DNA of 64,000 nucleotides, taken from assembly GCA_002269645.1 (NCBI GenBank), contig NIVC01000268.1:248001-312000 (forward strand). The letters are read 5' to 3'. The notes under the pieces were generated by a model. It was given only the letters and a program-made list of their open reading frames with translations. It did not search any database and was not told the DNA's origin. Numbering within the stretch: the stretch's first letter is position 1; each line of letters starts with the position of its first letter. The DNA comes from Macrostomum lignano. Its lineage: Eukaryota. Position numbers and translations under genes: made by a program. Shown in pieces: positions 9,225 to 64,000 of this stretch.

Positions 9225-9765
9225 CTCTTATAATGCCGCCATTCAGTTCATTTGATCTTACATAATGCCGCCATTCAGTTCATTTGATCTTACATAATTC
9301 CGCCATTCAGTTCTTTTGATCTTACATAATGCCGCCATTCAGTTCCTTTGATCTTATATGATGCCGCCATTCATTTCATTTGATCTTACATAATGTCGCC
9401 ATTCAGTTCATTTGATCTTACATAATGCCGCCATTCAGTTCTTTTGATCTTACATAATGCCGCCATTCAGTTCATTTGATCTTACATAATTCCGCCATTC
9501 AGTTCTTTTGATCTTACATAATGCCGCCATTCAGTTCCTTTGATCTTATATGATGCCGCCATTCATTTCATTTGATCTTACATAATGTCGCCATTCAGTT
9601 CATTTGATCTTACATAATGCCGCCATTCAGTTCTTTTGATCTTACATAATGCCGCCATTCAGTTCTTTTGATCTTACATAATGCCGCCATTCAGTTCTTT
9701 TGATCTTACATAATGCCGCCATTCAGTTCGTTTGATCTTACATAATGCCGCCATTCAGTTTGAAT
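9225..9765. repeat. Intronic minisatellite, 32-bp unit CTTACATAATGCCGCCATTCAGTTCATTTGAT
   Basis: About 17 tandem copies in TJAP1-like intron 1. Confidence 0.95.
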
Positions 9766-10435: not shown

Positions 10436-10469
10436 GTAAGGCTTATGCATACCGTTTATTAGGCTTTAT

Positions 10470-13832: not shown

Positions 13833-14040
13833 TTAGATAACAAACATTGCGTAGACAATGGACACTATCCCGCCCAGCAGCATGGTGCCCAGGTACATTC
13901 TTAAGCCGAAATCGGCCAGCCAAAAATTGCCAATCAGAGCCAAAATGAACGCCGTGGCGGGTAGAAGGCGGCTCAGCGGCAATCTTGACACCTTGGACGG
14001 ACCGGCAAAGCGGCCGGTTTCGTTGAATTCGGACATCATT
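13833..14040 (-). CDS. AGPAT5: AGPAT5 exon 5 (last)
   Basis: Acceptor CCCTGCAG|A restores frame; MMSEFNETGRFAGPSKVSRLPLSRLLP...hydrophobic tail...YAMFVI*. The five exons total 1095 nt = 364 aa. Confidence 0.9.
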
Positions 14041-14076
14041 CTGCAGGGAGTGGGGCTGATTGTTAGTGTGGACTGA

Positions 14077-17000: not shown

Positions 17001-17645
17001 CAGGGAATGGGGAGATGAGACACAGGGAATGGGGAGATGAGACACAGGGAATGGGGAGATGAGACACGGGGAATGGGGAGATGAGTCACAGGGAATGGGG
17101 AGATGGTACACACGGAATGGGGAGATGAGACAGGGAATGGGGAGATGAGACAGGGAATGGGGAGATGAGTCACAGGGAATGGGGAGATGAGACACGGGGA
17201 ATGGGGAGATGAGTCACAGGGAATGGGGAGATGGTACACACGGAATGGGGAGATGAGACAGGGAATGGGGAGATGAGACAGGGAATGGGGAGATGAGTCA
17301 CAGGGAATGGGGAGATGAGACAGGGAATGGGGAGATGAGACAGGGAATGGGGAGATGAGACACAGGGAATGGGGAGATGAGTCACAGGGAATGGGGAGAT
17401 GGTACAGGGAATGGGGAGATGAGACAGGGAATGGGGAGATGAGACACAGGGAATGGGGAGATGAGACACAGGGAATGGGGAGATGAGACACAGGGAATGG
17501 GGAGATGAGTCACAGGGAATGGGCAGATGGTACACACGGAATGGGGAGATGAGACAGGGAATGGGGAGATGAGACACAGGGAATGGGGAGATGAGACACA
17601 GGGAATGGGGAGATGAGTCACAGGGAATGGGGAGATGACACAGGA
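14077..17645. repeat. 3.5-kb G-rich intronic minisatellite: 20/16-bp units GATGAG(ACAG)GGAATGGTGG, then about 22-bp units GAGATGAGACACAGGGAATGGG
   Basis: Fills almost all of AGPAT5 intron 4 (14041-17662); source of the spurious 860-890 aa ORFs. Confidence 0.97.
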
Positions 17646-17662
17646 AATGAAATGAAACCAAC

Positions 17663-29559: not shown

Positions 29560-31584
29560 ATGCAGACTCAACCGGAGTGCATCCCGTCTCTGGGCCGGGC
29601 CTTTCAGCTCGGACAGATGTACGACATCCGACAGCACCGGATCATTGCACAGTCGGCCTGGCCCACAGATCGAATTCGGCGAATGACGACTCGGCTGGAT
29701 GATGCGCCCAGCGTGAGGTTTTCTCTGGACTACGAGTACAGCTCGAAGCGCCGAGCGGAACAGCTGGGGCTGAACGCCCAGCTGAGGTTTTGCATTGAGT
29801 TCAAATTGGCCTGGTGGAAACTCGGCGAGAAGTCAATGACAGGATCAGCAAAATACGTCACCGAGGCAAGCTCCAACGAGACCAGTGGAAGCGTCACTTT
29901 GCAGTACGACGTGAAGGGTCCGTTTGAAGAGCTTCAGTGCTGCAACGAGCCTGTAGACAATGAGAAGAAGTTACTAAGCACTGGTGCAACACACGTTGTG
30001 ACAGGAATCCGGTACGGAGGCAAGGCGTTCATTGTCTGCAAAGGCTGGTCCAATGCGTCCAGCTTCTTCGAGCGAGCAACATCTGACTGTCATGAACTGG
30101 TAGATTGGAAGGTGGAACAGTGGATCAGAGATGCTGGGCAGTCTGCCAGATCATTCGCTAAATTTGACTTGCCGAACCGCTCAAGTTCTGGCAGTTATCA
30201 GATCGAATGTCACACCGACTTCAAGCAGCCAAGGAAGACCATGAGAGAGCCACCAGATGTTTTAGAGTATTTTAAATCGTTAGATTCAAGGGATGCAAAC
30301 AAAGCAATGGAAATTCATCTCACTCCATTGCGCTACTTTTGCCCGTCGGTTCCAGCTTCAGTCCCAATGGCAAAAACGCAGCATCTGGAAGATGCCTGCC
30401 AGTACCTTCAAGCGTTGAAGGCCGGCTTTGAACAGTCCGAGGATCTTTTGGACAAGATCAGCCGGGAGGCAGAGTTGAACATTTCAATCGGAGAGACACT
30501 GCATGGCTACAAGAGAGAGCTGGACACTCATGTGAGCGAGTACACACAGCGGATGCAACAAAGTTTTGTGAATCATCGCACTTCGGACGAGTTTGCTGAA
30601 GCTCATCACGCCGGCAGTTTAGACAGCGTCTTCACCTACAGCAGCATGGACACCTCTTTGAACATGTTTGGTCGCCAAACTACCGACCTCTGCGATTTAA
30701 GTGCAAAGCTTCGACAGGGTATTGACGCTACAAGCGCGGAAGAACTTGAGACAAAAGCAGAAAGATTGGCAAAGGAAATCGAAGACCTGTTCAGCATACA
30801 CGACTCGAACAAGCAGCTCCAAGAGCAAATGTGCCCAGGACAGAGCCACTTTAGAATTAAGCGCACCAGAATCGAAGAAAGAAGTCGGGATGATCGGTCC
30901 TGCATCACTTGGTGCATCAGGTGTCGAAGTACGTGTCATGCAAACTGTGGCGTGCCGAATAATGAGGATAAAGCAAGGTGTGGTGCTATGAAACCTAATG
31001 GATACTGTAAAGAGTGCGACTGCCACTGGAGGCTTCACCGGAACACCAGCACCGAACAGAGAGAGGTTGAACACTACGAATTTGTTCCCATTGACAGAGT
31101 GAGCAAGAAGTATGGAGAAAATCCGAACCAGCGCGGTGCTGTGAGGCGTCTCAAGTATCACCTTGGAATGGACGCGAAGATGGCTTTGCAGAAAACGGCC
31201 TACGAACTCGTGAAAGCGCACAGGTGCTTGAAAGGCCTGCACCAGGACGTCAACTTGGATCAGTTCATTAGAGACAAGCTTCGGTCCAAGCGGCTCGATC
31301 CAGAAGATTCCTCCAAGTTGATTCAGCTGACCAAAGCTATCGATGCACGAGTTGAGGATAGAACCGATTACGCTAGGTTTGAATGGCAGTCACGAAGGCA
31401 GGAACCTCCGACAACGCCGCCGACATTTGGTGCAGTAGGAGTAGTCGCCGGTGATGTACATGGACGCCTCTCTGCAGGTTTTCCTGGTGTCGGTGCATTC
31501 GGTTCTGCTTGGCACGAAAGGCCCACCAGGCGACAAAATCGGGATTCAAATCCTCAGTCTGATTCGGAGTGCGTTATTAGTTGA
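29560..31584 (+). CDS. Stonustoxin-like MACPF/CDC protein B with Cys/His-rich module and C-terminal CaaX (674 aa, intronless CDS)
   Basis: IPSLGRAFQLGQMYD, TGSAKY, ATHVVTGIRYGGKAFIV and MEIHLTPL are SNTX hallmarks; helical region; CITWCIRCRSTCHANC...C...CKECDCHWRLHRN; ends ECVIS*. Confidence 0.85.
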   Translation: MQTQPECIPSLGRAFQLGQMYDIRQHRIIAQSAWPTDRIRRMTTRLDDAPSVRFSLDYEYSSKRRAEQLGLNAQLRFCIEFKLAWWKLGEKSMTGSAKYVTEASSNETSGSVTLQYDVKGPFEELQCCNEPVDNEKKLLSTGATHVVTGIRYGGKAFIVCKGWSNASSFFERATSDCHELVDWKVEQWIRDAGQSARSFAKFDLPNRSSSGSYQIECHTDFKQPRKTMREPPDVLEYFKSLDSRDANKAMEIHLTPLRYFCPSVPASVPMAKTQHLEDACQYLQALKAGFEQSEDLLDKISREAELNISIGETLHGYKRELDTHVSEYTQRMQQSFVNHRTSDEFAEAHHAGSLDSVFTYSSMDTSLNMFGRQTTDLCDLSAKLRQGIDATSAEELETKAERLAKEIEDLFSIHDSNKQLQEQMCPGQSHFRIKRTRIEERSRDDRSCITWCIRCRSTCHANCGVPNNEDKARCGAMKPNGYCKECDCHWRLHRNTSTEQREVEHYEFVPIDRVSKKYGENPNQRGAVRRLKYHLGMDAKMALQKTAYELVKAHRCLKGLHQDVNLDQFIRDKLRSKRLDPEDSSKLIQLTKAIDARVEDRTDYARFEWQSRRQEPPTTPPTFGAVGVVAGDVHGRLSAGFPGVGAFGSAWHERPTRRQNRDSNPQSDSECVIS

Positions 31585-36039: not shown

Positions 36040-37040
36040 AATATGGTGAACGGGAGCCCAAATGATGAAATGGTGAATCGGTGCCTAATTAATTATGAAA
36101 TGGTAAATTGACGCCTAACTGATGATAAATTGTGAACCGGCGCCTGACTGATGATGAAATGGTGAATCGGCGCCTAATTAATGATAAAATGGTGAATCGG
36201 CGCCTAATTAATGATAAAATGGTGAATCGGCGCTTAATTAATGATAAAATGGTGAATCGGCGCCTAATTAATGATAAAATGGTGAATCGGGGCCTAATTA
36301 ATGATAAAATGGTGAATCGGGGCCTAATTAATGATAAAATGGTGAATCGGGGCCTAATTAATGATAAAATGGTGAATCTGGGCCTAATTAATGATAAAAT
36401 GGTGAATCGGGGCCTAATTAATGATAAAATGGTGAATCGGGGCCTAATTAATGATGAAATGGTGAATCGGGGCTTAATTAATGATAAAATGGTGAATCGG
36501 CGCCTAATTAATGATAAAATGGTGAATCGGCGCCTAATTAATGATAAAATGGTGAATCGGCGCTTAATTAATGATAAAATGGTGAATCGGCGCCTAATTA
36601 ATGATAAAATGGTGAATCGGGGCCTAATTAATGATAAAATGGTGAATCGGGGCCTAATTAATGATAAAATGGTGAATCGGGGCCTAATTAATGATAAAAT
36701 GGTGAATCTGGGCCTAATTAATGATAAAATGGTGAATCGGGGCCTAATTAATGATAAAATGGTGAATCGGGGCCTAATTAATGATGAAATGGTGAATCGG
36801 GGCTTAATTAATGATAAAATGGTGAATCGGGGCCTAATTATTCATAAAATGGTGAATCGGGGCCTAATTAATGATAAAATGGTGAATCGGGGCCTAATTA
36901 ATGATAAAATGGTGAATCGGGGCTTAATTAATGATAAAATGGTGAATCGGGGCCTAATTATTCATAAAATGGTGAATCGGGGCTTAATTAATTATAAAAT
37001 AGTGAATCTGGGCCTAAGCAATGATGAAATAGTGAATTAG
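36040..37040. repeat. Intronic minisatellite, 30-bp unit ATGATAAAATGGTGAATCGGGGCCTAATTA
   Basis: About 30 copies inside PLGRKT intron 2. Confidence 0.97.
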
Positions 37041-37220
37041 CGCTTAAGTAATGATAATGATAAAATGAATCAACTGAGTCATCATTATTAGGCCCATCTA
37101 AAATTCTATCTCCAACAGAATGCCTTTTTACCATGTCTTGTAGGCCCATGCAGCACGCATACAATGACATGTACGCTATGCATAAACAATAACTCCAGGA
37201 TATTTTTACAAGCAACTCAC

Positions 37221-38960: not shown

Positions 38961-41354
38961 GGGCAATTTGTCTGCAAGCTATTCTTATGGACCCTGTTTG
39001 CACACAAGCTTTAGTACACTTGGCTAGTGGGGTTAATCTAGCCAACTTGACATGTCTGGAGCAAATGACTTATCACTATCTGTGCATCTCTTTATGCCTT
39101 GCTCCCCATTATTGTATCACACTATTATGAGAAATAAATGCCTAATAAATAAATTTTAGGCTGAGTCATATAGGAAAAATCAATGTAGTAAAACAGTTCT
39201 GGTTAGCTTTCAAGCTGTCTAAATTTTTATATATGTAGTATTGGCAGACAGATACCAAGGATAACTTTTATAGCTAAAAAACATACATAGGCCTAGTAAG
39301 AAATTTTTTAAGATTTTTCATTACTACTTTTTATAACTTTAAGTGCATATTATTCATCTCATAGACAAAATATTAAATTTAGGGTTATGGTTAGGGTTAG
39401 GGTTAGAAGTTTGACAGGAGATTTTTTTCAAGGCTATATGTAGCTTATTAAAAAATGTATATTGCATTTCTTTGGCTCCCCAACGGGAGGCGTAGATTGC
39501 TAGTCATGATTCTGAAGCTGCACATATGCTTGCCATCTATCAATGATTCTATATTATATGGCGATTATATATATATATCCCCATCCATCACATGTGTGCC
39601 AGAGAGAACATGGCAATATTTCAGCAGTAGCATTGCAGTTATGACTGGCACCTGGCCCATGCTCAACTATACCAAGTACCCATTGATTAGGCTAGTGTGC
39701 ACCTTGGTAATACTTTTGATAAAAGAAGTAAGAGTCATTTTTATTTACTTCTTTGCCAGGAGCACTAGATGATCAATGAGGTACTAGGCACATATATCTT
39801 TAATAGTTTTGTTAGTCAACAATGGTATTATGGCCAATGTTGCACTGCTATTGGCACTGACCCTGCTTTGCTTCTGCAGTCTACCACCAAATTAGCTCTA
39901 ATGTAACAACTGGTGCAATGAGATGGCTAGCTTTAAAAATGAGCCTTATCTAATTGATACCTGGGCATGATAGTTGATATATGCCCATGCAAGTTGATCA
40001 TACATGTCTAACCTCAAGATTTCACTTGTCTGGTGCAACTTAGTTTTGTCCAGATTTGCAACTTATTTTCTCCTGATTGCAACTTAATTTTCACTTTGTA
40101 TATGAATTTTCTTGCTTTTTTCTCTTTTCTTCTCTTTCTCTCTCTCTACTTTTCCACCCTCTCTTTTCTTCTCCTTTTTTCTTTCTACAATTTTTTGTTT
40201 TTTGCATTTTCAATTTTGCGACTTACCTCGGCTAGTGGCCATTTCACCCATCCAGTTTGGATGGGTTGGACAAGTGTTGGGTATATATGAAGTTGATCTA
40301 AGAATCAGTCACTAATTTGCCACTGAAAAATGCATTGCTATTTGACATATCCCCGTTGCCACCTAGAGGTCATAATGAGCATAACCATTAGTTTGCAATA
40401 AGATAGTAAGTTGCCATATAGTTAACTATGCCTTGAGATGTTGTGATAATGGCAAGCTCTTGCATGCCAATGAAATGAAATAGGCTTCATTTATTAATAA
40501 AACACTTTCCTAGAAATATCCCATTTTAAAATTATGCCATCTGTTACACTGTACAAATTTTAGAAATATTTTGCATACTCTATATATTCTATATATCATC
40601 ATTTTGTTTTAAACAGCAAGAAAATTTTAGTATAAATAGGAGGCAGCTAGAGACCAAACCAAATAAATTGTGTTGACTTTTCCTTGTTATTCTTTTTGCC
40701 TTTGAGCTTTAAAGTTAGAACTAGAAGTCAATCAGCCTCAAGGCTTGTATTCACTTATGTTACTTATTTTGAGTAGTAGATAGCAACTTAGGAATAGCCC
40801 TAAGATTGGAAGAATTCAATCCATTCTTAGAGAACAAGATATCTAGATTTAGAATCTGATAAATTGCCTTAAGAAGGCAGAAATCCTACCACAAGGTAGA
40901 ATAGTCCAGACTCAGGAGTCTGGGAAACCCATCTCAGGGCAGAAAACCCAGCAAGCAAGCTGTGACCCTCTGATCCTGGGAATGTCCAGGATAGGACTAA
41001 GAGAATAAAATTCCTTAGAGGAAAATAAGGATATAGTAAACAGTGCCATTAGACTGCTCATGCCAAAAGTGCAGTATATATACATATGTTACCAGTAAAT
41101 AAATTCATGCATTACCAATAAAAATATACTGGTAATAAATAATACTAATAGCAATAAGATCATCTAAGAGGATAGAAATAAAGCCCTGGGACAGCTTTTG
41201 GTAGGATTGAAGTCAGCCCTATAACAGCTTTGGGTGACAGCCATGGAATTATTCTAGAAGGCAGAAGTAACCCCTACATTAGTAAAGTGAAGGTTGCATA
41301 GCTGCATGGCAAGGTTGCATAGCAAATGTAAGACATTTAACTAATGGCTCTAAA

Positions 41355-41660
41355 AGAGCCACCATGCCAAACATAAAAGAGCCACCATGTCAAACAAAAA
41401 AGAGCTACTATGTCGAACATAAAAGAGCCACCATGTCAAACATACAAGAGCCACCATGTCAAACAAAAAAGAGCCACTATATCAAGCATAAAAGAGCTAC
41501 TATGTTGAACATAAAGGAGCCACTATGTCAAACATTAATAAGCCCAGGCTGAATATAAAAGAGCCACCATGTCAAACATAAAACAGCCACCATGTCAAAC
41601 ATAAAAGAGACATCATTTCAAATGTAAAAAGAAGCATCATGTCAAATATAAAGGAGCCAC
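41355..41660. repeat. 23-bp-unit minisatellite AAAAGAGCCACCATGTCAAACAT
   Basis: Read directly. Confidence 0.85.
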
Positions 41661-46774: not shown

Positions 46775-49215
46775 CTAAAGCCAATTGACGCTATGGAGAT
46801 TGACCCACCCACAATCCGTACCCAACGCCAACTCCGCCCTCCTGGAGACCTTCATCCAGTCTAGGAACCTCGTCGGAGTGAATGGCTCTCTACGGCAGCG
46901 GCTCGCGAAGCTTCTAACTTTCTTCGGCCCAAACGGCAGAACGACAAGGCTGGACTGGATCCTCTGCCCTTTTCCGTTGCGTTCTAGAGTGCGCAAAGTG
47001 ATCAACATCCGCCCCAGATGCGTCGCTTCCGACCACAGCTTGGTTGCCTGCGAACTGAACCTCTCGTGGACGAGATTCAGACGCCCCCCGCCGAAGCCTC
47101 TCTGGGCAGACCTGAGGAACCCAGAGACTCGCACTGACTTCCTGACCGAGCTCTCCAACGCGAGCCCCGCCATCACCGAGACAGCTGAGGCCTTTGCGAA
47201 TGCCGTCGGGTCGGCAGCGTCAGTTCTGCCTAGACAAATAGGACACCAGCCAAGGGCACTTTGGGACTGCGACGCCGTGATCGCCACTACCAGACGCTCT
47301 GCACAGAGCGCCGCTGCGCGTCACGGCGAGGACAGCGACCAGGCTAGACTCGCCAGAGACAACCTGCAGGCGACGTACGCCCAACGCACTGAATTATTTA
47401 TTGAGGAGGCGGTCCAGGAGATCCAGGCCGCCACCGACAACTGCCGGCACACCGCTGCCTGGCGAGCAATCAACCGCCTCACAGGACGAAGACCCCGTCC
47501 GACCACAGTCGTTGGCGCTGAGTCCATAGAGCAAAGAAAGAGCCTGCTTGTCGACCACTACCGGCAAGTTTTAAATGCCCCCTCCCCGACGTCTCCCCTT
47601 CTCCCGGCCGCCGGCTTCACCCCAGCTCAGCATGGCGACTTCTACACCGGCCCGATCACCGCCGCGGAAGCTACCAAGGCGCTGAAGAGCATGCGCGCTG
47701 ACGCTGCCTCTGGAGTCGACCGAGTGCCTCCCAGGGTTCTGAAGTTGCCAGAGCTTACAGACAGCATTACTAGCATCCTGAACAAGTACTGCTGTCTCGG
47801 CGGCGACCCAGCTGCTATGGCCGCCCCCCTCTGGCGTACTTCAAGAATTGTCTCCATCCCGAAGAAGGACGCCTCCACGAGCCTTGACAACCAACGCGGT
47901 ATCGCACTGGAGTGCACGCTGCCAAAGCTGCTGAACGCAGTGTTGTGCAATCGGCTCCTCCCTGTCCTGAACTCGCTGCTACTCGAGCTTCAAAGTGGCT
48001 TCAGGCCAGGAAGATCCACTACGGAGCAGATTGTGGCCATTCGGTGCATTGTCGAAACCTGCAAGACTCGTCTTCGAGCCGTGTCTATCGTCTTCGTTGA
48101 CTTCCGGAAGGCCTTCGACTCTGTCAGCAGGACGGCCTTAGCCTGGCTCCTGGCTCAGTACGGCGTCCCCGACACCCTGGTGACGGCAGTTATGGACCTG
48201 TGCCACAACTCCAAGGCGTTTGTCGACTCCAGCGATGGCCCTACGGACGAGTTTGATACCACTTCCGGGGTGCTGCAAGGGGACACGCTATCTCCCCTGC
48301 TTTTCATTCTGGCTGTTGACTACATCTTGCGCCGCTGCCTTTGAGACGACGACAGCTTTGTCCTCGCGCCTCAGCGTAGCTCCCGCCACACTGCCGTGAC
48401 GCTCCCAGCCCTCGCCTATGCTGATGACATCGCGCTGCTGTGCCGAGACCCTGTAGCAGCCCAGCACGCTCTTACTCGACTCTCCGAGGAAGGCGCCCGG
48501 ATCGGCTTGCAGATTAACACAGGCAAGACGGAGGTGCTGCACGTGGGTGCTGACAATGCCCCACCGCTGACCCTGCCCAACGGCGAGGCCATTTCAACGT
48601 GCAGCGACTTCCGCTACCTAGGCACCCTCGTAATGAGCCCAGAGGCGATCATCGCGGACAGGAGGACCCAGGCCTGGCGCGCCATGCACCACCTCAGGCC
48701 GATCTTCACCTCCGGAGGGCGGGACGACCTGAAGATCCACCTGTTCCGCGCCGCTGTAGAGCCGATCCTTCTCCACGGCATGGAGGCTGTCCCGATGACA
48801 ACCACGCGAGAACGGGCCCTGGACGCGATGCACCGCAACCTGCTGCGCAAGGCGCTGGGCGTGCGCTACCCGACCGTCCTCTCGACGGCCCAGCTGATGG
48901 CGAGATCGAAATCACCGTCCCTCAGCGCCACCCTCCGCCGGCGCCGCCAGGCCCTGCTGGGACACTGCCTGCGGCGGTTCGCCCGCGGCGACGACAACCC
49001 GCTTGGACTGGCCATTCTGCATCCGCCGACCGAACGGTTCCGCCGCGGCCAAGGGCGGACCCAGACGCTCCGGGAGACTCTTGTCGCCGACCTGGAGGCA
49101 ATTGGACTGACCCCCCAGACTGCTGCGACCTGCCCTGCCCCTCTTTTTTGCAATCGTGTGCGCTTGTACCCCCCGACCCTAGCGTCGTTGTAATGTAATG
49201 TAATGTAATGTAATG
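46775..49215 (+). mobile_element. 5'-truncated RTE-like LINE (APE C-terminus + RT), nearly intact, one internal stop, (TGTAA)n tail
   Basis: TFFGPNGRTTRLDWIL...SDH (endonuclease), NQRGIAL, QSGFRPGRST, FVDFRKAFDSV, GVLQGDTLSP, LAYADD, RRRRQALLGHCLRR. TGA at 48342-48344 lies between two same-frame ORFs. Tail at 49189-49215. Confidence 0.92.
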
Positions 49216-54459: not shown

Positions 54460-54870
54460 ACAGTTAGTGGACACACAAAAATCTGAGGATGACACACTAA
54501 TCTTGAACGGACATTAATCTTGAGCTGGACACACTAATCATGAGGTTGATACACTATTCCTTGACGTGGACACACTAATCCTGAGGTGGACACACTAATC
54601 CTGAGGTGGACACACTAATCATGAGGTTGACACGCTAGTCCTGAGGTGGACACACTAATCCTGAGGTTGACACGCTAATCCTGAGGTGGACACTCTAACC
54701 CTGAGGTTGACACGCTAATCCTGAGGTGGACATGCTAATACGAGGTGGACACACTGACCCTCTGGTGGACACGCTAATTCTGAGCTGGACAGGCTAATAT
54801 ACTTAAGTGGACACACTAATGCTGAGATAAATACGCTCGTACGTCACGACACTAATCCTAAAGTGGACAA
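54460..54870. repeat. 20-bp-unit minisatellite CTGAGGTGGACACACTAATC
   Basis: Read directly. Confidence 0.9.
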
Positions 54871-55976: not shown

Positions 55977-58105
55977 TTGGCAGGTCAAGGCTGGTGGGAG
56001 GTCTGCACCCTCTATTTGCCTCTGGCAGCCGCAGACCCCCCCCCCACGCTGTCTCGCAAGTCGACCCAGGGTACTCGTCCCCGCGTGTGTTCAAGGCAGT
56101 CCCTAGGGCTGCTGGACAGACTGGGCTCCGGCGCTGGCGACCCTATCCAGTGGCTTCGGCCGAATTTGGGTTTGCGGGTCTGGCTGCTAGTGGACTGGTG
56201 TATCACCGCAAAGTCCGCAGGGGGAGACGGGCAACTCAATTGTCCTCGGCCTTTCCAGCACTTGGGCGAGTCGGTACCCTAATGGATCCTCTTTCCAGCT
56301 GGGTGCCCTCAAGCTCAAGATGCGCCGAGGAAAGTCTGCCAAAGGGAAGGCTACTGCCAACCCCGGCATCTCCGGCAAGAGCGGGGCGCAGTCTAAGGCA
56401 CAAGGAAAGGCGCAAGCCGATCCCAAAGCCAAAGCTGCGTCTCGCCCCTCTGCTAGCAGCAGTTCGGCGACCGCGGTAACGGCTCCGGCCAAGCCCCGGG
56501 AACCAAACCTGCCAGTCGAAGAAGGAGTTGAGGACGAGGCCGGGTCTTCGGAATCCGAGCTCTCCTCGGCCACCCTGGTGGGGTCTGAAGGTAAAGATGC
56601 AGATGAGGAAGCTTCCTCCATCCTGTCATCGGAGCCTGAGGACTCTGCTGGGGGGGGCGGTGGGGGTGAGGAGGCCATGGACGTCGACCAACTTTCATCT
56701 CCCAGTCAAGCCCCAGCGGCCTGGGACGAGGACGATCTGTTGTCCAAGTCTCCTTGATGGCCCTGGGCTCTAGCCAGACATTGCATTTAATACAGTATGA
56801 CTAAGCTCCACGCTGCCAAAGGAGCGACATTCTGTTTGCAAATAAATTTACAGCATTGCGTATCTGCGTCAGTAAATCTGATGAAGATTGCTGAGCTGTA
56901 CAGGCCAGGCCTCATCCTGATCCAGGAACCCTGGATGCGCAACGGTAAGTTGCCCAACATTCCCTCTGGCTACTCTGATTTTTATGTGTGTGGCCCGGGG
57001 AACAGCCGCCCTAGAGCGGCTATCCTCGCTGCTAGCCATCTCCAGGCTTGGCTGAGGACTGATCTCTCTGATGGAGACCTTTGAGTCATCCAATCTAATC
57101 ATTTCTCTCCGCGTACGTGTCTTGTTGCCTCGGTTTATATCCCAGGCGACAGAGACCCTGCTCCCAAGAGTTTACTGCGCCTCGCGCAGTATTGCGAGTC
57201 CCAGAACGCTGAGCTGTGCTTAGGGGGCGACCTCAACGCGCACCACAAGCACTGGGGCAGCAAAGATACCAACACTAGAGGAGAGGAGCTTCTGGCCCTC
57301 ATCTCTAACACAAACCTCATGCTCTGCAACCGCAGCAGCACTCCTACCTTTAATAATGGCAGATGGACCGAGGTCCTCGACGCCACACTCGTTACCCCAA
57401 GACTCTTTGACAGAGTTGAGGAGTGGAGAGTCTGGTCTGAGGAGCCCTCCCTGTCTGACCACTGCTTTATCGCCTTTAACATCGCGGACACTAAAACCCA
57501 GTCTCCGATCATTTCGGAGGCGCAATATCCGCAACACTGATTGGGCGGCCTACAAGGCTGCCCTTGATCTGCACCTGCAGGAACTCACGGACTTACGTCC
57601 GATTGAGACCTGCGAGGATGCGGATCCATATGGCTGAGACGCTGACAGGTTGCATTATTGCAGCCTACGTAGCGGCTTGTCCTGCTCGCGCCTACAAAGG
57701 CAAGACCTCGGCGCCGTGGTGGAACCCGGAGCTGGGGAAACTCAGGCGGAAGGCCAAAAGCCTTCATCGCCGTGCCATGAAGACCGGAAACCCGGAGGAC
57801 ATGGAGCTTTTCCGGCAAGCCTCCCGCAATTTCAAATCTGAAGTTCGTAAGGCCAAGGAATGTAAGTGGCGCCAATTCTGCAATGAATTGTATCAAGACA
57901 GACCTACTTCTAGGCTTGTCAAGGCCCTTACAATGGACAAAATGTCCAAATTAGCCATGATCAAAAAAGATTATGGCTCTCTTACTAAAGACCCTGAAGA
58001 AGTGCTTCAGCATATGCTCAGCACATTCTTCCCGAGGGTACCTACTGCTAGACCGGAGCCCAACCATTCGATGGATGGAGCCACCCTAGCGGCGGGCATT
58101 GTCAC
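55977..58105 (+). mobile_element. LOA/R1-group non-LTR retrotransposon (ORF1 remnant + APE endonuclease ORF2), cut before the RT domain by an LTR insertion
   Basis: ORF2 from about 56797: QINLQH, LIQEPW, RPRAAI, ASVYIP, GGDLNAHHKHWGSKDTNTRGEEL, PTF, LDAT, SDH, RNIRNTDW, APWWNPEL..LRRK, KAKECKWRQFC. One stop (57082-57084) and two frameshifts. Low-complexity ORF1 tail ends at 56757. Confidence 0.82.
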
Positions 58106-58371
58106 TGTTTAGGAGATGGCTTACATGTACTTTTCATTCATCTACGCGTAACATTCATATCAGAAATTTTTGGTATACGTACGTTTCAGCCCCAGCCCCC
58201 ATTTATAATGTTCAGTAGCACCCACCTCATTTAGTTAAAATTATTGCAATATATATTTATCAGTCTCTCCAGAGAGAGTGCGCATGCTGGTTTTTTTTGT
58301 TCGTTTGGCTAGTAGCCGAAAAATAGTCGCTTACTGCGAAGACTCAATTTATTGCATGAACCATCAAAACA
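58106..58371 (+). mobile_element. 5' LTR (266 bp) of a BEL/Pao retrotransposon
   Basis: TGTTT...AAACA terminal inverted repeat; starts exactly where the LINE ORF breaks; followed after 2 nt by the PBS. Confidence 0.85.
58315..58358 (+). other. Spliced-leader-exon-like sequence inside the LTR
   Basis: GCCGAAAAATAGTCGCTTACTGCGAAGACTCAATTTATTGCATG. The 29 nt at 58330-58358 match the 3' part of the Macrostomum lignano SL as I recall it (..CTCTTACTGCGAAGACTCAATTTATTGCATG). It ends in ATG, as flatworm SLs do. Confidence 0.72.
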
Positions 58372-58373
58372 TC

Positions 58374-58391
58374 TGGTAGCAGAGCGTGGTT
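58374..58391 (+). promoter_or_regulatory. Primer-binding site complementary to initiator tRNA-Met
   Basis: TGGTAGCAGAGCGTGGTT is the complement of AACCACGCTCTGCTACCA, matching the animal tRNA-iMet 3' end pattern ..CTCTGCTACCA. Confidence 0.88.
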
Positions 58392-58409
58392 CTACTTCAT
58401 TGGTAAAAA

Positions 58410-61400
58410 ATGTCTGATGAAGAAGCAGAGATGCAAGAACAAGTGCCGGAGGGAGACAGCCGTCTCATTTCGCTGAAGGCCAGAAAGGCGGTCGACAAGT
58501 GCGCGTTCACGAAGCAACGGAATCGTCTACTGAAGGTATTGGGCTCGGACGGAGCTACTTTGGCGGACGTGGAACCGCTGGCCGGCACTCTGGATGACCA
58601 CTACGAGCGAGTTAGTGCGGTGCTACAAGCGATTCTGCCCGAGGTCGTCGGGAATCTACCAGTGCAAGTCCAGACAGTAAAGGAATTGGAAAAGCTGGAG
58701 ACTGAGTACGGTGAGATTGTAAATTTGCTGAGAGAATTGCGCAAGAGGGAGCGAGAGGTACGACTAGAGTCGAGGGAGATCGAGCAAAAAGAGATGCGAC
58801 AGAAGGAGTTGGAGGCAGTCAGGCGGCAGCGGATAGAGATGGAGGAGGAGCAGCGCAGAATGCAGCAGGAGTTTGCAGAGAGGCAGCGCGAGTTAGATGT
58901 CAGATTGGATGCGCTAAGAGTGGCAGAGACGTCAGCGAGCGAAGAGGATCAATTGTACTCCTCTCAACTACGGGTAGAAGCGGCCGTCCAATCGCAAGCT
59001 GCGTATTCAGTACCAGTCGCCAACCCCATGGTTCAAGCCGACCCTTTAGTCAACCCCTTAATTGGGGGAGGGTCAGAGCTACTACGGAGCGCTGAACAAG
59101 GGGGTGAGAGAGTAAAGACCGGAGAAAAATCAATACCACCCACCCCAACTGGCGGCAAGTGTGACCACGCTGATTCTAACCAACCCCGCGGACAGCTAGG
59201 TATCCAAGCGATGTACGGTGGAGCTAATTCGCCAATTAGGGCTTCACAGGCCGCCGCCGCGGAATGTACAGCGAAAGCTTGGGCTGAGGAGAGAATCGGT
59301 CAAGATATGTGGAGGCAGTTGCAGAGAGTTGCAATACCGGTGTTTAGTGGAGACAAACGGGAGTTTGAAGGATGGCGGGCGGCTTTCTATGCCTGTGTGC
59401 ATGCCTCGCCATCTTCAGAGGCCTATAAGTTATTGCAATTGCGCCAGTCGCTGCGAGGAGAGGCATTAAAACTTGTTGCGAATCTTGGCTACTCGGAGTT
59501 CGCCTACAAAGCGGCTCTGGAAAGGCTTGAGCGGGAGTATGGTGGAGAGCGGCGTAGGTTGGTGTTAGCACTGGAGAAGCTGGATAATTTTCCACCGATC
59601 CAAGTAGAGAACCCGTCCCGGCTGAAGCAGCTGGCCGATTTGCTCGATGTCACCGTGGTGAATTTGAAGGCGGCAGGCAGGGAAGTGGAGCTTAATAGCA
59701 ACGGTTTGCTCTATTTGAGAGTGCAAAAGAAGCTCCCAGCCGACATGCTTGCACGATTCCATCGGTGGGTCGGAGAAGGGAGACGAGAAGACTCGCTGAG
59801 TGTACTGCACCAATGGTTGTTAGCTGAGGCAGAGTACCAGACGGTAGCCATGGAAGCAGTAAAAGGAGTTACTGGAGAGTCACAACCGAAAGCACGACAA
59901 GGCCGTGGAGAGCCGGGGCGCACGCACTTTGGCGGCAGTGTCAACGTGAGTGACAATAGAAGGGAGCAGAATGAGGAACGAAAAGGCTGCAGTTTGTGCA
60001 ATGAGAAGCATGGAGTGTGGAAGTGTCCGAAGTTTCTAAGAATGGATTCGCAGGCCAGGTGGGAAGTGGTAAAACAGAAGCGACTGTGTTTTAGCTGCCT
60101 GGGAACAAATAACTTGAGCGGTGCTTGCAAGCGTGGAATGAGCTGTGGAGTGGACAACTGCAAGGCGAGACACAGCAGGTTGCTGCATGAGACACGCAAT
60201 CATCCAATGGCGTTTAAGCACGAAGGGGGGCGATCAAGGGCGAGCGAGAAGCCCCAGAAGCCGGTCGATCAAGCGGGAGGTAAAGACAGCAAACAGCAGG
60301 AGTCCTGTACTTTGTTGGCGCAAGGTGCAGCACCTATCTCCTTGAGAACGGTACCAGTGATTCTGTCAAACGGTAATCGGGAGCTGCGAGTGAACGCCAT
60401 ACTTGACGACGCGAGTAGGCGTACCTACTTAAACTCGGATATAGCAGCGGAGCTCAACCTGGAAGGGAAAGTGGAGGTGATGATAGTAAAAGTGTTGAAT
60501 GGCCAAGTAAGCACTTTTCAAACAGCACCGGTGGAGGTCGGCATCCGGAGTTTAGATGGGACCTTTCGGGCGAGAGTGTCAGCGCACACAACGGAAAGAG
60601 TGACAGGTGATTTGAAAGCAGTCGATTGGAGCAATTTGGCCAGACAGTGGAGCCACTTGCGTGGCATTCCATTCGATAAGATTGAAGGCAAGCAGACTGT
60701 CGACATATTGATTGGAGTTGATCATGCAGATCTGCATTTCGCCTGTCGAGAAGTTGGAGGATTGCCCGGTGAACCGATTGCAAGGCTAACGCCAATCGGG
60801 TGGACCTGTGTTGGACAGTTGGATCAGGCGTCGGCGGACAACTTGGCGGAAAGTCAGCAATCATTCTTCAGTTTGGCGCACGAGGAAGATGCTGCTGAAG
60901 TGCTAAAGAAATTCTGGGAGGTTGAAGAGGTGCCGGATACATCGCCCCGAGCGTTGCTGTCAGAAGAAGAACGCAAGGCGGTGCAGATGGTTGAAGCAAA
61001 CCTGAAGTTTGAAGCTGGACGATATCAAGTGACGACTCCGTGGAAGGTGAATCCAACGGCATTGCCTAGCAACAGGAATGCAGCCCTGCATCGGTTAGAG
61101 TGCACTGAAAAGCGTTTGCGGAAAGATCCAGATCTGGCAAAGGTGTACCAGGAGGTGCTTGACGGACATCTGGTTAAAGGTTACATAGAAGAAGTCGACG
61201 GCACAGTGCCAGTGGCGGGTGAGTGGTACCTGCCGCACTTCGCAGTAGTGCGAGCGAACAAAGACACCACAAAGACGCGCATTGTCTTTGATGCATCAGC
61301 ACGCTGCAATGGAATCTGCTTGAACGATGCCATCTTTGCTGGCCCAAAACTGCAAAATGATCTCTTTAAGGTGCTGCTAAGATTCCGCATGCATGCAGTG

Positions 61401-64000
61401 GCACTGGCCTGTGACATAGAAGAAATGTATTTGAGAATCAGGTTGGCCGCTGAAGACAGGCGCTTCTTTCGGTTTCTTTGGCGACGACTTGAGGCAGATC
61501 GTGATGTGGAGCCTAAGGTGTACGAGTTCCGAAGCGTCGTCTTTGGTGTGAACTGTTCGCCATTCTTGGCCCAGTTTGTGACGCAAGAGAACGCACGCCG
61601 ACATCAGGAAGAACTGCCAATGGCGGCGAGGACTGTGTTGCGTTCTACGTACATGGACGATAGCTTAGATTCAGCAAAGGATGTGCCGCAAGCGATCCAA
61701 TTGTACGAACAGCTGACCGAGTTGTGGAGCCGAGCCGGGATGAGAGCACGCAAATGGATTTCCAACTCGGCGGAAGTGTTAGCAAGAGTTCCGGAGTCCG
61801 AGCGGGCCCCGCGGTCTGAGTTGCTGCTGACAGGCGAGTCACCAACCAGCAAAGCCCTGGGTGTCAATTGGCGGGCCAAGGAAGACGTGCTGTCAGTCAC
61901 CATGGATGAGTCGAATAGCAACGGAAAGATCACAACGAAGCGACAGCTGCTGCGAAGCATTGCCAGTGTGTTCGATCCATGCGGCTTCCTAGCTCCATGT
62001 GTCATTCGTGGAAAGATCATGCTTCAAGAGATTTGGCAGCACGGATGTGACTGGGACGAGCCGATCGATCCGGAGATGGCGGAGAAGGCATCCCAATGGA
62101 TGAGCGAACTTTCAGTTCTTCAGCAAGTTGCTGTGCCGCGATGTCTGAATCCGCAAGATGCGTACGGAGCTGTAGTCTACTTCCGGGGCCACAATATTGA
62201 TGAGGAAGTAACGGTGCGCTTTGTAGCGTCAAAGTCGAAGGTAGCCCCGCTATTGACTGTCAGCGTCCCGAGGCTTGAGTTGATGGCCGCAGTGCTCGGA
62301 GTTCGGCTGACCAAGACGATCGCGGAGGCTCTGGACATGGACATTAGAGTAGCAACCCTTTGGACCGATAGTCAAAACGTCCTGTGGTGGATACAGAACC
62401 GGAGTCGGGCGTTCAAGCCATTTGTTGCCAACCGAATCGCACAAATTCAGCAAGAGGTGAAGGTAAATCAGTGGAGATACGTGCCGACGAAGTTAAATCC
62501 AGCAGATATTGTCTCCAGAGGATGCAGCGCTTCTGAGTTGCCGAATTTGCGACTGTGGTTCCAGGGACCAGAGTTCCTGCAGCAGAAGGAAGAATTTTGG
62601 CCGGAGAGAAGGGTTCCATTAGTTCCGGAGGACGCAGAAGTTTCCAAGAAGCGTTAAGGGATGGTCGCCCTGGGTCCAAGTGAGCAGCGCCAGGAGCGGA
62701 CATTCGTCGCGGAAGCGGAGACAATGGGAAAAAGATGGCGGTTAGACCCAACTCGATTCTCTGACTTTAGAAGGCTGCAGCGAGTCATGGCTTATGTTCT
62801 GCGCTTCTTGAGGAACTGCCGGAAAAGTCCAGAGTTTCGAGAGATCGGCGAGTTGAAGGCGGACGAGTTGGAAGATGTAGAAGAGCGGCTTGTGAAATCC
62901 GCACAGGATGAAGCGTTCACTCGACAAAGCTGCGGTGACAAGAAGCTGCAGTGCTTGCAGCCCGTTAGGGATCCGTCTGGAGTGCTGAGGGTCGACGGTC
63001 GTCTGAAGTTCGGTCAGCAGTTACCGTTTCAAGCGAGACACCCAGCGATTCTGCCGAGAAAGCACTGGATCACTAAGCTACTCATCAAGAAATTTCATGA
63101 AGAGCGAGCACATGGAGGCACAAACGATGTCTTGGCCGCAATTGCATCGAAGTATTGGATCATCGGAGCCAGAGAGGCGATTCGTCAGTGGGAGCTCGAT
63201 TGTGCGGTTTGCAGGAAACGGCGAGCACGTCCCGCAACTCAGCAGATGGCACCGCTGCCAGAAGCGCGCCTCGCTTTCTCGCTCAAGGCATTCACGCATG
63301 TGGCGGTCGACATGGGCGGTCCGTTCATCACCATTCAAGGACGAGGAAAGCGACGCCAGAAGCGCTACATAGCTCTGTTCACGTGCCTAGAGACACGCGC
63401 GGTGCATTTAGAGATGACCTTCGGGCTCGACACTGACTCGTTTTTGAATGGTTCTACCGCATGGTCAACCGTCGAGGTCTGCCAAAGATCATGCACTCAG
63501 ACAACGGCGGAAACTTCGTAAAAGGAGCAGAAGAGCTCAAGCAACTGGAAAGTGTGAACAAGACCAAATGGCAAGAGAAGACAGCAGTGCACGGAGTGAG
63601 ATAGAGCTTTCAGCCGCCGGCAGCACCACATTTTGGTGGAGCGCATGAAATAATGATCCGCGCAGCGAAGCGGGCACTGAGCGCGATCCTCGGGAACGCG
63701 GATGTTAACGATGAGGAGTTGCATTCAGCGATCACCGGTGCAGAGGCGCTCCTTAACTCGCGCCCAATCACGTACCAGACGGCCAACCCGATGGACGAGG
63801 CACCGTTAACGCCCAATCATTTTCTTCACGGACAAGCCGGAGGGCAGTTTGCACCGGATGTATCGGAAGAGGTAGCGATCAGTCCAAGAAAGCGCTGGCA
63901 ACGGGTACAGGAGCTTGTGACGCATGTGTGGCGGCGATGGATGCGAGAGTGGCTACCCGGCCTGCAACCGAGGTCAAAATGGCCGACCAACAGAGAAACC
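58410..64000 (+). mobile_element. BEL/Pao gag-pol (Gag with 3 Zn knuckles, protease, RT, RNase H, integrase), defective, continues beyond the window
   Basis: IPVFSGDKREFEGW..AF, CSLCNEKHGVWKC, CGVDNCKARHSRLLH, LRTVPV, NAILDDAS, WYLPH, RIVFDAS, YMDD, SKSKVAPL..VSVPRLEL.AA, WTDSQ, HGG...C..C, AVDMGGP, RAVHLE, SDNG, PHFGG. ORF 58410-62657, in-frame TAA, then 62661 onward with a frameshift at about 63450 and TAG at 63602. Confidence 0.95.

What the first reader, a model, noticed from the sequence alone, without database searches (positions are those of the whole stretch)
58315..58391. A BEL/Pao LTR that carries the host spliced-leader exon
Seen: the last 57 nt of the 5' LTR read GCCGAAAAATAGTCGCTTACTGCGAAGACTCAATTTATTGCATG-AACCATCAAAACA, then the tRNA-iMet PBS. 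Knowledge: flatworm SL exons end in AUG, and I recall the M. lignano SL as (GCCGTAAAGACG)GTCTCTTACTGCGAAGACTCAATTTATTGCATG (from memory, needs verifying). The LTR matches its 3' 29 nt exactly and its 5' part with a few changes. It is not followed by a GT donor or Sm site, so it is not an SL RNA gene. Inference: the element has hard-wired an SL into its R/U5. It could have captured it by reverse-transcribing a trans-spliced genomic RNA, or recruited an SL-RNA promoter plus exon. Its transcripts could then mimic trans-spliced mRNA 5' ends (translation advantage, self-disguise) without using host SL snRNP. I do not know of a description of this.
Basis: partly seen in the sequence, partly recalled or inferred. 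Interest (0 to 1): 0.92.

Follow-up and report, generated by a model that had tools for sequence, protein, structure and literature searches.

The report
Host spliced-leader relic inside a retrotransposon LTR
A defective BEL/Pao retrotransposon of the flatworm Macrostomum lignano carries a copy of the host's spliced-leader exon 13 bases from the end of its 5' LTR, most likely a fossil of a trans-spliced element RNA that was reverse-transcribed; similar relics have been noted briefly in parasitic flatworms.

Summary
Window 58315-58358 is a 44-nt copy of the 45-nt Macrostomum SL exon. Its 3' 29 nt are identical. Its 5' 15 nt are homologous, with 4 substitutions and 1 deletion. Thirteen nt (AACCATCAAAACA) follow, then TC, a tRNA-iMet-type primer-binding site and a BEL/Pao gag-pol.

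A LINE that is 97% identical to M. lignano proteins breaks off at 58104-58107. This fixes the LTR at about 58106-58371 (TGTTT...AAACA), so the SL lies inside the LTR.

Similarity to a genuine SL RNA gene (metagenome locus L007) starts and stops exactly at the exon borders. There is no GTAAG donor, no Sm site and no shared promoter. The copy therefore came from a spliced mRNA, not from an SL gene.

Best reading: an element RNA was trans-spliced 13 nt upstream of the U5 end and was then copied into strong-stop cDNA. An irregular first-strand transfer built the SL into the LTR.

Nothing supports a transcription start at 58315 or a mimicry function. This copy is defective. The 3' LTR and sister copies could not be reached.

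Genome-encoded SLs in flatworm retrotransposons were already reported in passing (Schistosoma mansoni 2018; 24 parasitic species 2025). This is a new, better-resolved member of a known kind.

The parts
56833..58105 (+). 5' part of a LINE (endonuclease and linker, with frameshifts), cut off by the insertion. It serves as the marker for the LTR's 5' border.
   Evidence: P0024 (a 1235-aa LINE) residues 7-431 map to 56833-58103. P0023 (M. lignano UniRef A0A1I8HDL8) is 97.7% identical up to 58106 and then continues EDLIARAGG..., whereas the window reads V-stop.
58106..58371 (+). Inferred 5' LTR of the BEL/Pao element, 266 bp, with its start uncertain by 2 nt. It runs TGTTT...AAACA.
   Evidence: The LINE homology stops at 58104-58107. 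G+C drops there. The ends form a TG...CA, 5-bp terminal inverted repeat. The PBS starts 2 nt after the end, as in relatives L001 and L002. No second copy is in the window.
58233..58268 (+). AT-rich, TATA-like stretch (TAAAATTATTGCAATATATATTTA) followed by an Inr-like TCAGTCT. This is the candidate core promoter, and/or the AATATA poly(A) signal of the 3' copy.
   Evidence: Read from the sequence. Motif reading only; no transcript data.
58291..58314 (+). GGTTTTTTTTGTTCGTTTGGCTAGTA: a T-run plus (T)AG immediately upstream of the SL copy.
   Evidence: Read from the sequence. It resembles a pyrimidine tract plus AG, but it does not fit the M. lignano trans-splice acceptor motif [T/C]TNCAG. A similar T-run plus GTTCG occurs in the LTR of relative L001, but the LTR similarity is not significant.
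58307..58317 (+). Palindrome GGCTAGTAGCC spanning the junction between the upstream LTR sequence and the first three bases of the SL copy.
   Evidence: Read from the sequence and seen in the fold. The idea that GCC served as microhomology for strand transfer is inference.
58315..58358 (+). Copy of the host spliced-leader exon, 44 nt against the canonical 45. It sits at LTR positions 210-253.
   Evidence: The differences from the SL are: deletion of T5, G9>A, C11>T, G12>A, T16>G.
58330..58358 (+). The 29 nt identical to the SL's 3' end, finishing with the SL's AUG.
   Evidence: 29/29 match; unique in the window; 0 of 100 shuffles gave a match.
58359..58371 (+). AACCATCAAAACA: the last 13 nt of the LTR (U5 end). 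By inference, this is the 'exon' to which the SL was trans-spliced.
   Evidence: It follows the SL's last base directly, with no GT donor. It ends in the CA and AAACA that mirror the TGTTT at 58106.
58356..58379 (+). Seven-codon upstream ORF (MNHQNIW-stop). It opens at the SL's AUG and closes at the TAG inside the PBS. It is out of frame with gag.
   Evidence: Direct reading.
58374..58392 (+). Primer-binding site TGGTAGCAGAGCGTGGTTC, complementary to the 3' end of an initiator-tRNA-Met-type tRNA.
   Evidence: The same PBS sits 2-4 nt after the LTR in distant relatives L001 and L002. The assignment to tRNA-iMet rests on established knowledge of the AGCAGAG...CUCUGCUACCA acceptor stem. No tRNA gene is in the window.
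58410..62657 (+). gag-pol ORF, 1415 aa, with DUF1759 gag, RT and the Pao peptidase family. It ends at an in-frame stop at 62655-62657. An in-frame deletion at about 62150-62160 removes a block around the '(V)DAS(Q)' motif that relatives carry; that this block holds an RNase H catalytic Asp is my reading from general knowledge, not a test.
62661..64000 (+). Integrase region (H2C2 zinc domain and core), broken by a frameshift at about 63452 and a TAG stop at 63602-63604. It is cut off by the end of the window.

Best explanation
The segment is a fossil of SL trans-splicing that reverse transcription fixed into the LTR of a BEL/Pao retrotransposon of Macrostomum lignano.

**Proposed sequence of events**
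1. A transcript of the parent element was trans-spliced by the host at an acceptor 13 nt upstream of the end of U5. This gave an RNA reading SL-AACCATCAAAACA-TC-PBS-gag-pol.
2. That RNA was packaged. Minus-strand strong-stop cDNA was primed from tRNA-iMet at the PBS and copied the 13 nt and the SL.
3. Trans-splicing had removed the 5' R, so the first strand transfer could not use normal R homology. It landed in the 3' copy of the LTR through little or imperfect homology. The GCC of the palindrome GGCTAGTAGCC at the junction is a candidate landing point.
4. The rest of reverse transcription then produced LTRs of the form U3-(part of R)-SL-13 nt. One of them is seen here.

**Two sub-versions remain open**
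- (i) The whole SL was copied, and its 5' end was mutated at or near the irregular transfer, or it came from a variant SL.
- (ii) The jump happened before the SL's 5' end was reached. In that case only the 3' ~29-32 nt are SL-derived, and the SL-like 5' 15 nt are native LTR sequence that guided the jump.

**Function.** In this copy the SL is a passenger with no demonstrated function. It sits inside the leader or U5, its AUG opens only a 7-codon upstream ORF, and the copy is dead.

**Shown and inferred**
- Shown: the identity of the SL, the exact exon borders, the absence of SL-gene features, the position between the LINE breakpoint and the PBS, and the BEL/Pao coding content with its lesions.
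- Inferred: the acceptor in the parent, the irregular strand transfer, and the presence of the SL in the 3' LTR.
For: **Identity of the SL**
- The match covers the whole exon. The 3' 29 nt are 29/29 and the 5' 15 nt are homologous (P about 4e-4).
- The published SLs are quoted.

**Spliced configuration**
- A genuine SL RNA gene (L007 615-723) has the identical exon, followed by a GTAAG donor, an Sm-like AGTATTTTTAG and three hairpins (z = -3.3).
- The window has AACC after the exon and shares nothing upstream or downstream with that gene. The local alignment score is 16 against 18.5 +/- 2.5 for shuffles.
- Five metagenome contigs show the same SL joined to unrelated mRNAs right after ...GCATG.

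**Inside an LTR**
- The LINE homology to M. lignano proteins stops at 58104-58107.
- The ends are TGTTT...AAACA, and the PBS follows 2 nt after the end, as in relatives.
- The element is BEL/Pao: DUF1759, RVT_1, Peptidase_A17 and Integrase_H2C2.

**Not decay in place**
- All 5 differences lie in the first 16 of 45 positions (P = 0.0036).
- The probability of 5 or more changes in 16 nt is 1.4e-3 even at 5% divergence.
- The differences therefore date from the capture or before it.

**Literature.** The same explanation was proposed for SL-bearing retrotransposons in S. mansoni (PMC5832876) and in parasitic flatworms (PMC12582326). Trans-splicing of an LTR-retrotransposon mRNA is documented for Cer1 (PMC3315495).
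Against: - No LTR pair, target-site duplication or sister copy could be examined. The 'LTR' status of 58106-58314 rests on its borders only.
- The acceptor AG in the parent is hypothetical.
- The concentration of all differences in the SL's 5' third, next to a perfectly kept 3' 29 nt, is what selection on the 3' part would also produce. A function therefore cannot be excluded.
- A first-strand transfer without R is a rare event. It is known from retroviral vector work, which I recall from memory and did not check here.
- The new LTR has no obvious AATAAA downstream of the likely start site, so it is unclear whether such an element could replicate further.
Confidence: 0.7

Rival explanations
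1. Functional mimic. The SL is a selected, heritable part of R/U5 in an active BEL/Pao family. Transcription starts at or near 58315, so that element RNAs begin with an SL-like leader and gain translation or escape benefits without using the SL snRNP.
For: - The 3' 29 nt are perfectly kept, while all 5 differences sit in the 5' 16 nt.
- The copy starts exactly at the exon's first base.
- In-place decay does not explain the pattern.
Against: - No TATA-like sequence lies 25-35 nt upstream of 58315. The AT-rich and Inr-like motifs lie 47-82 nt upstream.
- No similarity exists to the upstream region of a real SL RNA gene.
- A Pol II mRNA start would carry an m7G cap, not the trimethylguanosine cap of SL RNA (established knowledge, quoted in PMC8629364).
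- The SL's AUG gives a 7-codon upstream ORF out of frame with gag.
- The only copy seen is defective.
- Folding of the leader is no better than shuffles.
Confidence: 0.12
2. The SL is not inside an LTR. The BEL/Pao sequence is a 5'-complete processed cDNA of a trans-spliced element mRNA (SL-13 nt-PBS-gag-pol...), inserted for instance by LINE machinery or at a break. The 209 bp at 58106-58314 are unrelated AT-rich DNA.
For: - The copy begins at the exact 5' end of the SL, as a full-length cDNA of a trans-spliced mRNA would.
- No second LTR is available to prove that 58106-58314 is U3.
Against: - It needs two separate insertions at one point of the LINE, or an unknown carrier.
- The block starts with TG exactly at the LINE breakpoint. 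Its TGTTT mirrors the AAACA that ends 2 nt before the PBS.
- The block has promoter-like AT-rich motifs, as a U3 would.
Confidence: 0.1
3. It is an SL RNA gene or pseudogene, or an SL promoter plus exon recruited at the DNA level. Either the element landed next to it, or it recombined into the LTR.
For: - The full-length exon is present.
- Flatworm genomes hold SL pseudogenes (PMC12582326).
Against: - There is no GTAAG donor, no Sm-like site and no intron hairpins.
- There is no Rfam match.
- There is no upstream or downstream similarity to the SL RNA gene in L007.
- The exon is joined to the element's own U5 end and PBS.
Confidence: 0.03
4. Chance similarity, or an assembly or cDNA-contamination artefact.
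For: - Boroni et al. raise chimeric assembly as a caveat for the S. mansoni cases.
Against: - A 29/29 match plus a homologous 5' part; 0 of 100 shuffles matched.
- The copy differs from the canonical SL at 5 positions, which contamination by real trans-spliced cDNA would not give.
- The junctions fit retroelement anatomy.
Confidence: 0.02

Closest known systems
Genome-encoded SL exons in flatworm mobile elements: S. mansoni, 6 of 32 loci (Boroni et al. 2018, PMC5832876); 597 discarded candidate SL loci near LTR and LINE elements in 24 parasitic flatworms (MBE 2025, PMC12582326)
   Same: - A host SL exon sequence, without SL-gene features, is embedded in or next to retrotransposons.
[quoted passage not shown]
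   Different: - Those reports are one-paragraph by-products of filtering. They give no anatomy: no position relative to LTR, U5 or PBS, and no mechanism for strand transfer.
- The 2025 loci are described as carrying only partial leaders.
- Here the host is a free-living macrostomid.
- The copy spans the whole exon and lies 13 nt from the LTR end, directly upstream of the PBS.
Relict DinoSL sequences in dinoflagellate retrogenes (Slamovits & Keeling 2008; reviewed in PMC6050394, PMC5585692)
   Same: [quoted passage not shown]
   Different: - Those are host-gene retrocopies, often with tandem truncated relics from repeated cycles.
- Here there is a single relic inside the LTR of an autonomous LTR element. 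This raises the R-homology problem, which retrogenes do not have.
SL1 trans-splicing of the spliced 2.4-kb Cer1 mRNA in C. elegans (PMC3315495)
   Same: - It shows that transcripts of an LTR retrotransposon can receive the host SL.
   Different: - In Cer1 the SL is added to RNA only.
- The full-length 8-kb RNA is not trans-spliced.
- No SL is encoded in the element's DNA.
SL-gene-specific non-LTR retrotransposons (SLACS/CZAR in trypanosomatids, NeSL-1 in nematodes; from my own knowledge)
   Same: - A physical association of a retroelement with SL sequence.
   Different: - Those elements insert into SL RNA genes by target-site choice, and the SL belongs to the target.
- Here the SL is in spliced form and is internal to the element.
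Retroviral and LTR-element transduction and template-switch chimeras (LTR-mediated retroposition; minus-strand transfer with short or absent R homology; from my own knowledge)
   Same: - Host RNA sequence is built into a provirus by irregular strand transfers, with microhomology at the junctions.
   Different: - The captured piece here is not a co-packaged host mRNA fragment.
- It is the leader that the spliceosome itself attached to the element's own RNA.

Membership tests
BEL/Pao LTR retrotransposon | gag-pol with a BEL/Pao-type gag (DUF1759), RT, the Pao peptidase family (PF05380) and integrase | tested here: met
   - PF03564 scores 1e-11, PF00078 1.7e-6, PF05380 2e-39 and PF17921 7e-8.
- The protein is 45-48% identical to full-length BEL/Pao polyproteins.
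BEL/Pao LTR retrotransposon | Two direct LTRs (TG...CA) flanked by a 4-6 bp target-site duplication | not testable with these tools
   - The window ends inside integrase, and no M. lignano DNA could be fetched.
- Only the 5' block could be delimited. It runs TGTTT...AAACA, with its 5' border at the LINE breakpoint.
- Relative L001 has 343-bp LTRs and a 5-bp duplication.
BEL/Pao LTR retrotransposon | A tRNA primer-binding site a few nt after the 5' LTR | tested here: met
   - TGGTAGCAGAGCGTGGTTC starts 2 nt after ...AAACA.
- The same PBS occurs in L001 and L002.
SL RNA gene | SL exon followed by a 5' splice donor (GTAAG in Macrostomum) | tested here: not met
   - The window has ATG|AACCA.
- L007 has ATG|GTAAG.
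SL RNA gene | An Sm-like site between hairpins, and a ~109-nt RNA with three hairpins | tested here: not met
   - L007 615-723 folds into three hairpins (z = -3.3) with AGUAUUUUUAG.
- The same span of the window does not (z = -1.2) and has no Sm-like site.
- There is no Rfam match.
SL RNA gene | Shared upstream (promoter) sequence | tested here: not met
   - The local alignment of 58106-58314 with the 250 nt upstream of the L007 exon scores below the shuffle mean.
- Caveat: L007 is from an unnamed Macrostomum-type worm in a metagenome, not certainly M. lignano.
Relict SL from reverse transcription of a trans-spliced RNA | The SL exon in DNA is joined directly, at its last base, to transcribed sequence without a donor | tested here: met
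   - Both exon borders are exact.
- Trans-spliced mRNAs L003-L006 and L008 show the same ...GCATG|N junction.
Relict SL from reverse transcription of a trans-spliced RNA | The parent locus has a trans-splice acceptor (AG) at the junction | not testable with these tools
   - No SL-less parent or sister copy is available.
Relict SL from reverse transcription of a trans-spliced RNA | The host uses this SL | tested here: met
   - The host is identified as M. lignano (or a very close relative) from 95-97% identical LINE proteins.
- The SL is published for M. lignano, M. cliftonense and M. hystrix.

The most novel reading that the evidence does not exclude
The SL copy is not a one-off scar. It is a conserved, working part of R/U5 in a BEL/Pao family that is or recently was active. 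Its 3' 29 nt would be held by selection, for example for SL-dependent translation or RNA handling. Alternatively the LTR-encoded SL in the 3' LTR could act as the landing site (R) for strong-stop cDNA made on SL-bearing RNAs. Either way, a retrotransposon would have adopted the host's trans-splicing leader as a replication or expression signal.
Probability: 0.12. Interest if true: 0.8.

Novelty: new member of a known kind. Interest (0 to 1): 0.4.

Why it matters
- **Evidence for the pathway.** It is a clean, base-resolved example showing that a trans-spliced retrotransposon RNA can be packaged, primed from the PBS and carried through reverse transcription and integration, although trans-splicing removes the 5' R repeat. 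The earlier flatworm reports only guessed at this.
- **A mechanistic question.** How does first-strand transfer succeed without R? The junction here offers clues: a palindrome and GCC microhomology, and 5'-biased changes in the SL.
- **A practical warning.** LTR-encoded SL copies can be mistaken for SL RNA genes. They can also create false trans-splice sites when SL-containing reads are trimmed and mapped, as is done for M. lignano annotation.
- **If conserved.** If the SL proved conserved across an active family, it would be a new kind of host-signal capture by a transposon.

Tried and rejected
**1. Sister copies and the 3' LTR could not be found.**
- No second copy of the LTR, the SL or the BEL element is in the window.
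- An exact look-up of the gag-pol ORF found nothing.
- Protein searches with gag-pol and with the gag N-terminus gave only relatives at 48% identity or less, from other hosts.
- The LINE query found nothing in that index, although the representative library holds M. lignano proteins.
- P0023 has no contig on record.
- Supplements of the M. lignano LTR paper are not held, and the Wasik 2015 paper is not held.

**2. The LTRs of the distant relatives L001 and L002 were uninformative.** The PBS is shared, but LTR similarity is not significant: score 25 against 20 +/- 2.4, with 10 of 300 shuffles as good. I therefore dropped the idea of inferring the ancestral R/U5 from them.

**3. RNA structure of the leader or SL copy gave nothing.** Z-scores were +0.4 to -1.2, no better than shuffles. 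The U5-PBS stem GAACCA/TGGTTC is noted only.

**4. The T-run plus TAG upstream of the SL is not a convincing acceptor.** It does not fit the published [T/C]TNCAG motif and could equally be a native LTR motif or a U-rich poly(A) downstream element. I kept it as an observation only.

**5. An SL RNA gene reading was rejected**.

**6. Decay in place as the cause of the 5' differences was rejected**.

**7. A scan of viral contigs for the SL gave no hits**.

Full report
**Observation**

Window 58315-58358 reads GCCGAAAAATAGTCGCTTACTGCGAAGACTCAATTTATTGCATG. It is followed by AACCATCAAAACA (58359-58371), TC, TGGTAGCAGAGCGTGGTTC (58374-58392) and an ATG at 58410.

The published versions are:
- M. lignano, 44 nt: CCGTAAAGACGGTCTCTTACTGCGAAGACTCAATTTATTGCATG (PMC5173321).
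- The 35-nt core used by the Berezikov group (PMC8629364).
- M. cliftonense, 45 nt, starting GCCG, and M. hystrix, 43 nt (PMC10468722, Table S3).

The last 29 nt match 29/29. This is the only such match in the window, and none of 100 shuffles produced one.

The first 15 nt align to the SL's first 16 nt with one deletion (T5) and four substitutions (G9>A, C11>T, G12>A, T16>G). Only 87 of 200,000 random 15-mers from the window align as well. The copy therefore represents the whole exon, from its first to its last base.

**Host**

The LINE fragment just upstream is 95-97% identical to Macrostomum lignano UniRef proteins. The window is therefore from M. lignano or a very close relative. The SL is conserved in the three Macrostomum species examined so far.

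**What surrounds the SL copy**

The ORF at 58410-62657 (1415 aa) carries DUF1759, RVT_1 and the Pao peptidase family. The next ORF carries the integrase zinc domain. The best relatives are BEL/Pao polyproteins at 45-48% identity.

This copy is dead. The lesions are:
- an in-frame stop at 62655-62657;
- an in-frame deletion near 62150-62160, which removes a block around the '(V)DAS(Q)' motif that relatives have (I read this as part of RNase H from general knowledge);
- a frameshift near 63452;
- a TAG stop at 63602-63604.

The window ends inside integrase, so the 3' LTR is not available.

**Is the SL really inside an LTR?**

There is no LTR pair to compare, but the 5' border can be fixed independently.
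- A LINE (P0024 residues 7-431 of 1235) runs from 56833 to 58103.
- The M. lignano protein P0023 matches at 97.7% up to codon ACT (58104-58106). It then continues EDLIARAGG..., whereas the window reads GTT TAG.
- G+C drops at the same point.
- The inserted block begins TGTTT (58106) and ends AAACA (58371), a TG...CA inverted terminal repeat.
- The PBS follows after 2 nt. In the distant relatives L001 (343-bp LTRs, 99.4% identical, 5-bp duplication CAAAC) and L002, the same PBS follows the LTR after 2-4 nt.

I therefore take 58106-58371 (266 bp, with the start uncertain by 2 nt) as the 5' LTR. The SL copy then occupies LTR positions 210-253.

**Origin: a spliced RNA, not an SL gene**

A scan of metagenome contigs for the SL returned two kinds of contig.
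- Five contigs have the SL at their 5' end, joined to unrelated coding sequences right after ...GCATG. These are trans-spliced mRNAs.
- One contig, L007, is a genuine SL RNA gene. Its exon is 45/45 identical to the published SL. It then has a GTAAG donor, an Sm-like AGTATTTTTAG and three hairpins (z = -3.3), as described for M. lignano in PMC8629364.

The window shares with this gene only the exon.
- The LTR sequence upstream of 58315 scores 16 against the 250 nt upstream of the L007 exon. Shuffles give 18.5 +/- 2.5.
- The sequence downstream is equally unrelated.
- There is no donor, no Sm site and no Rfam match.

Similarity that begins at the cap site and ends at the splice donor is the signature of a mature, spliced leader. 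This rules out an SL gene or pseudogene.

**Mechanism**

The simplest account has three steps.
1. A parent element's RNA was trans-spliced at an acceptor 13 nt before the end of U5.
2. tRNA-primed strong-stop cDNA copied those 13 nt and the SL.
3. The 5' R had been spliced away, so the first strand transfer landed in the 3' LTR region by little or imperfect homology. The resulting LTRs read U3-(part of R)-SL-13 nt.

Two details fit an irregular transfer.
- The palindrome GGCTAGTAGCC (58307-58317) bridges the junction, so GCC may be the microhomology used.
- All five differences from the SL lie in the 16 nt next to the junction (P = 0.0036 if placed at random).

These differences are not decay in place. 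The probability of five or more changes in 16 nt is 8e-7 at 1% divergence and 1.4e-3 at 5%. My own rough estimate, not a tool result, is that the copy's two stops and one frameshift in 5.6 kb suggest a divergence near 1%.

Two sub-versions remain open.
- (i) The full SL was captured, and its 5' end was mutated at the transfer or came from a variant SL. Three of the four substitutions are transitions, as expected for descent from the SL.
- (ii) The jump occurred before the SL's 5' end was copied. It would have been guided by a native LTR stretch that happened to resemble the SL. By my rough estimate such a resemblance would arise with a probability of about 0.1 if the best of a few hundred landing positions is chosen.

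SL-less sister LTRs would decide between them.

**What is not supported**

Nothing indicates that transcription starts at 58315.
- The -25 to -35 region is GC-rich.
- The AT-rich, TATA-like stretch (58233-58261) and an Inr-like TCAGTCT (58262-58268) lie 47-82 nt upstream of 58315. These are motif readings only.

The SL's AUG opens a 7-codon upstream ORF that ends at the TAG inside the PBS and is out of frame with gag.

The leader does not fold better than shuffles.

The T-run plus TAG just upstream of the SL looks like a splice acceptor but does not fit the M. lignano trans-splice motif [T/C]TNCAG.

A function in mimicry or translation is thus unsupported, though not excluded. The perfectly kept 3' 29 nt beside a changed 5' third is also what selection would produce. 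This is the basis of the novel case, to which I give a probability of about 0.12.

**Prior art**

The phenomenon as such has been reported.
- Boroni et al. 2018 found 32 genome-encoded SL exons in S. mansoni. Six were in transposable or retrotransposable elements, and the authors suggested 'trans-spliced retro-transcribed elements' (PMC5832876).
- The 2025 MBE survey of 24 parasitic flatworms discarded 597 candidate SL loci associated with LTR and LINE elements and gave the same explanation (PMC12582326).
- Dinoflagellate relict SLs are the classical parallel.
- Cer1 shows trans-splicing of an LTR-element mRNA.

Neither flatworm passage I read (the main text of the 2025 survey; the main text and Table S2 of the 2018 paper) says where in the element the SL sits or how an LTR element could complete reverse transcription from such an RNA. 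My full-text searches found no description for Macrostomum or of an SL within U5 next to the PBS.

**Verdict**

Capture through a trans-spliced RNA is supported. Promoter recruitment, a start at 58315, mimicry and a family-wide 'hard-wiring' are not shown.
- This is a new and unusually well-resolved member of a known kind. Its interest is moderate. The interest would rise sharply if genome-wide copies proved the 29 nt to be conserved in an active family.

**Limits**

The main limit of this work is that no M. lignano DNA outside the window could be reached. The 3' LTR, the target-site duplication and the sister copies remain untested.

Noticed in passing
window 56833-58105 (LINE); proteins P0029-P0032: The LINE cut by the insertion is 95-97% identical to stretches inside long M. 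lignano UniRef gene models. These models are named after unrelated domains (for example A0A1I8JA99, 'Protein kinase domain-containing protein', 2108 aa). They look like chimeric gene models that swallowed LINE fragments.
   Followed up: partly
L007 590-723 (metagenome contig Ga0302322_100095745): This is a complete Macrostomum-type SL RNA gene in an environmental metagenome. Its exon is identical to the published SL, and a partial duplicate of the exon start (GCCGTAAAC) lies 20 nt upstream. Five contigs of another sample (Ga0316592; L003-L006, L008) are trans-spliced mRNAs with the same SL. Macrostomid worms are therefore present in these samples.
   Followed up: partly
window 58358-58363 and 58387-58392: GAACCA, made of the last G of the SL plus the first 5 nt of the 13-nt U5 end, is complementary to TGGTTC at the 3' end of the PBS. 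This gives a U5-PBS stem in every predicted fold. The overall fold is not better than shuffles.
   Followed up: partly
window 14081-17649; also 5789-6498, 9214-9760, 10468-11338, 36061-37057, 41351-41660, 54467-54826: The window is crowded with minisatellites. One array has a 20-nt unit repeated about 182 times, which creates spurious ORFs of 860-890 aa on the minus strand (13833-16687). This fits the repeat-rich M. lignano genome.
   Followed up: no
window 46785-49193 and repeats 46897/49937, 48516/51234: A second, different non-LTR-type reverse transcriptase lies here (RVT_1, 1e-19). It has internal 73-75% direct repeats spaced 2.7-3.0 kb apart, which suggests two diverged tandem or nested copies.
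   Followed up: no
window 6589-7158 and 29560-31584: These are possible host coding pieces. One is a leucine-rich-repeat ORF (LRR_8, 2e-18). The other is a 674-aa ORF with a weak, below-threshold MACPF/SNTX-like match.
   Followed up: no
window 57978-57986: A 9-mer of the SL (TCTCTTACT) occurs inside the LINE coding sequence. About 0.5 such matches are expected in 64 kb (my own estimate), so it is taken as chance.
   Followed up: yes
tools: The word-indexed protein search returned nothing for the LINE query. The representative library holds M. lignano proteins that are 95-97% identical to it. Absence of close hits in the indexed search is therefore not evidence that sister copies of the BEL element do not exist.
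   Followed up: yes
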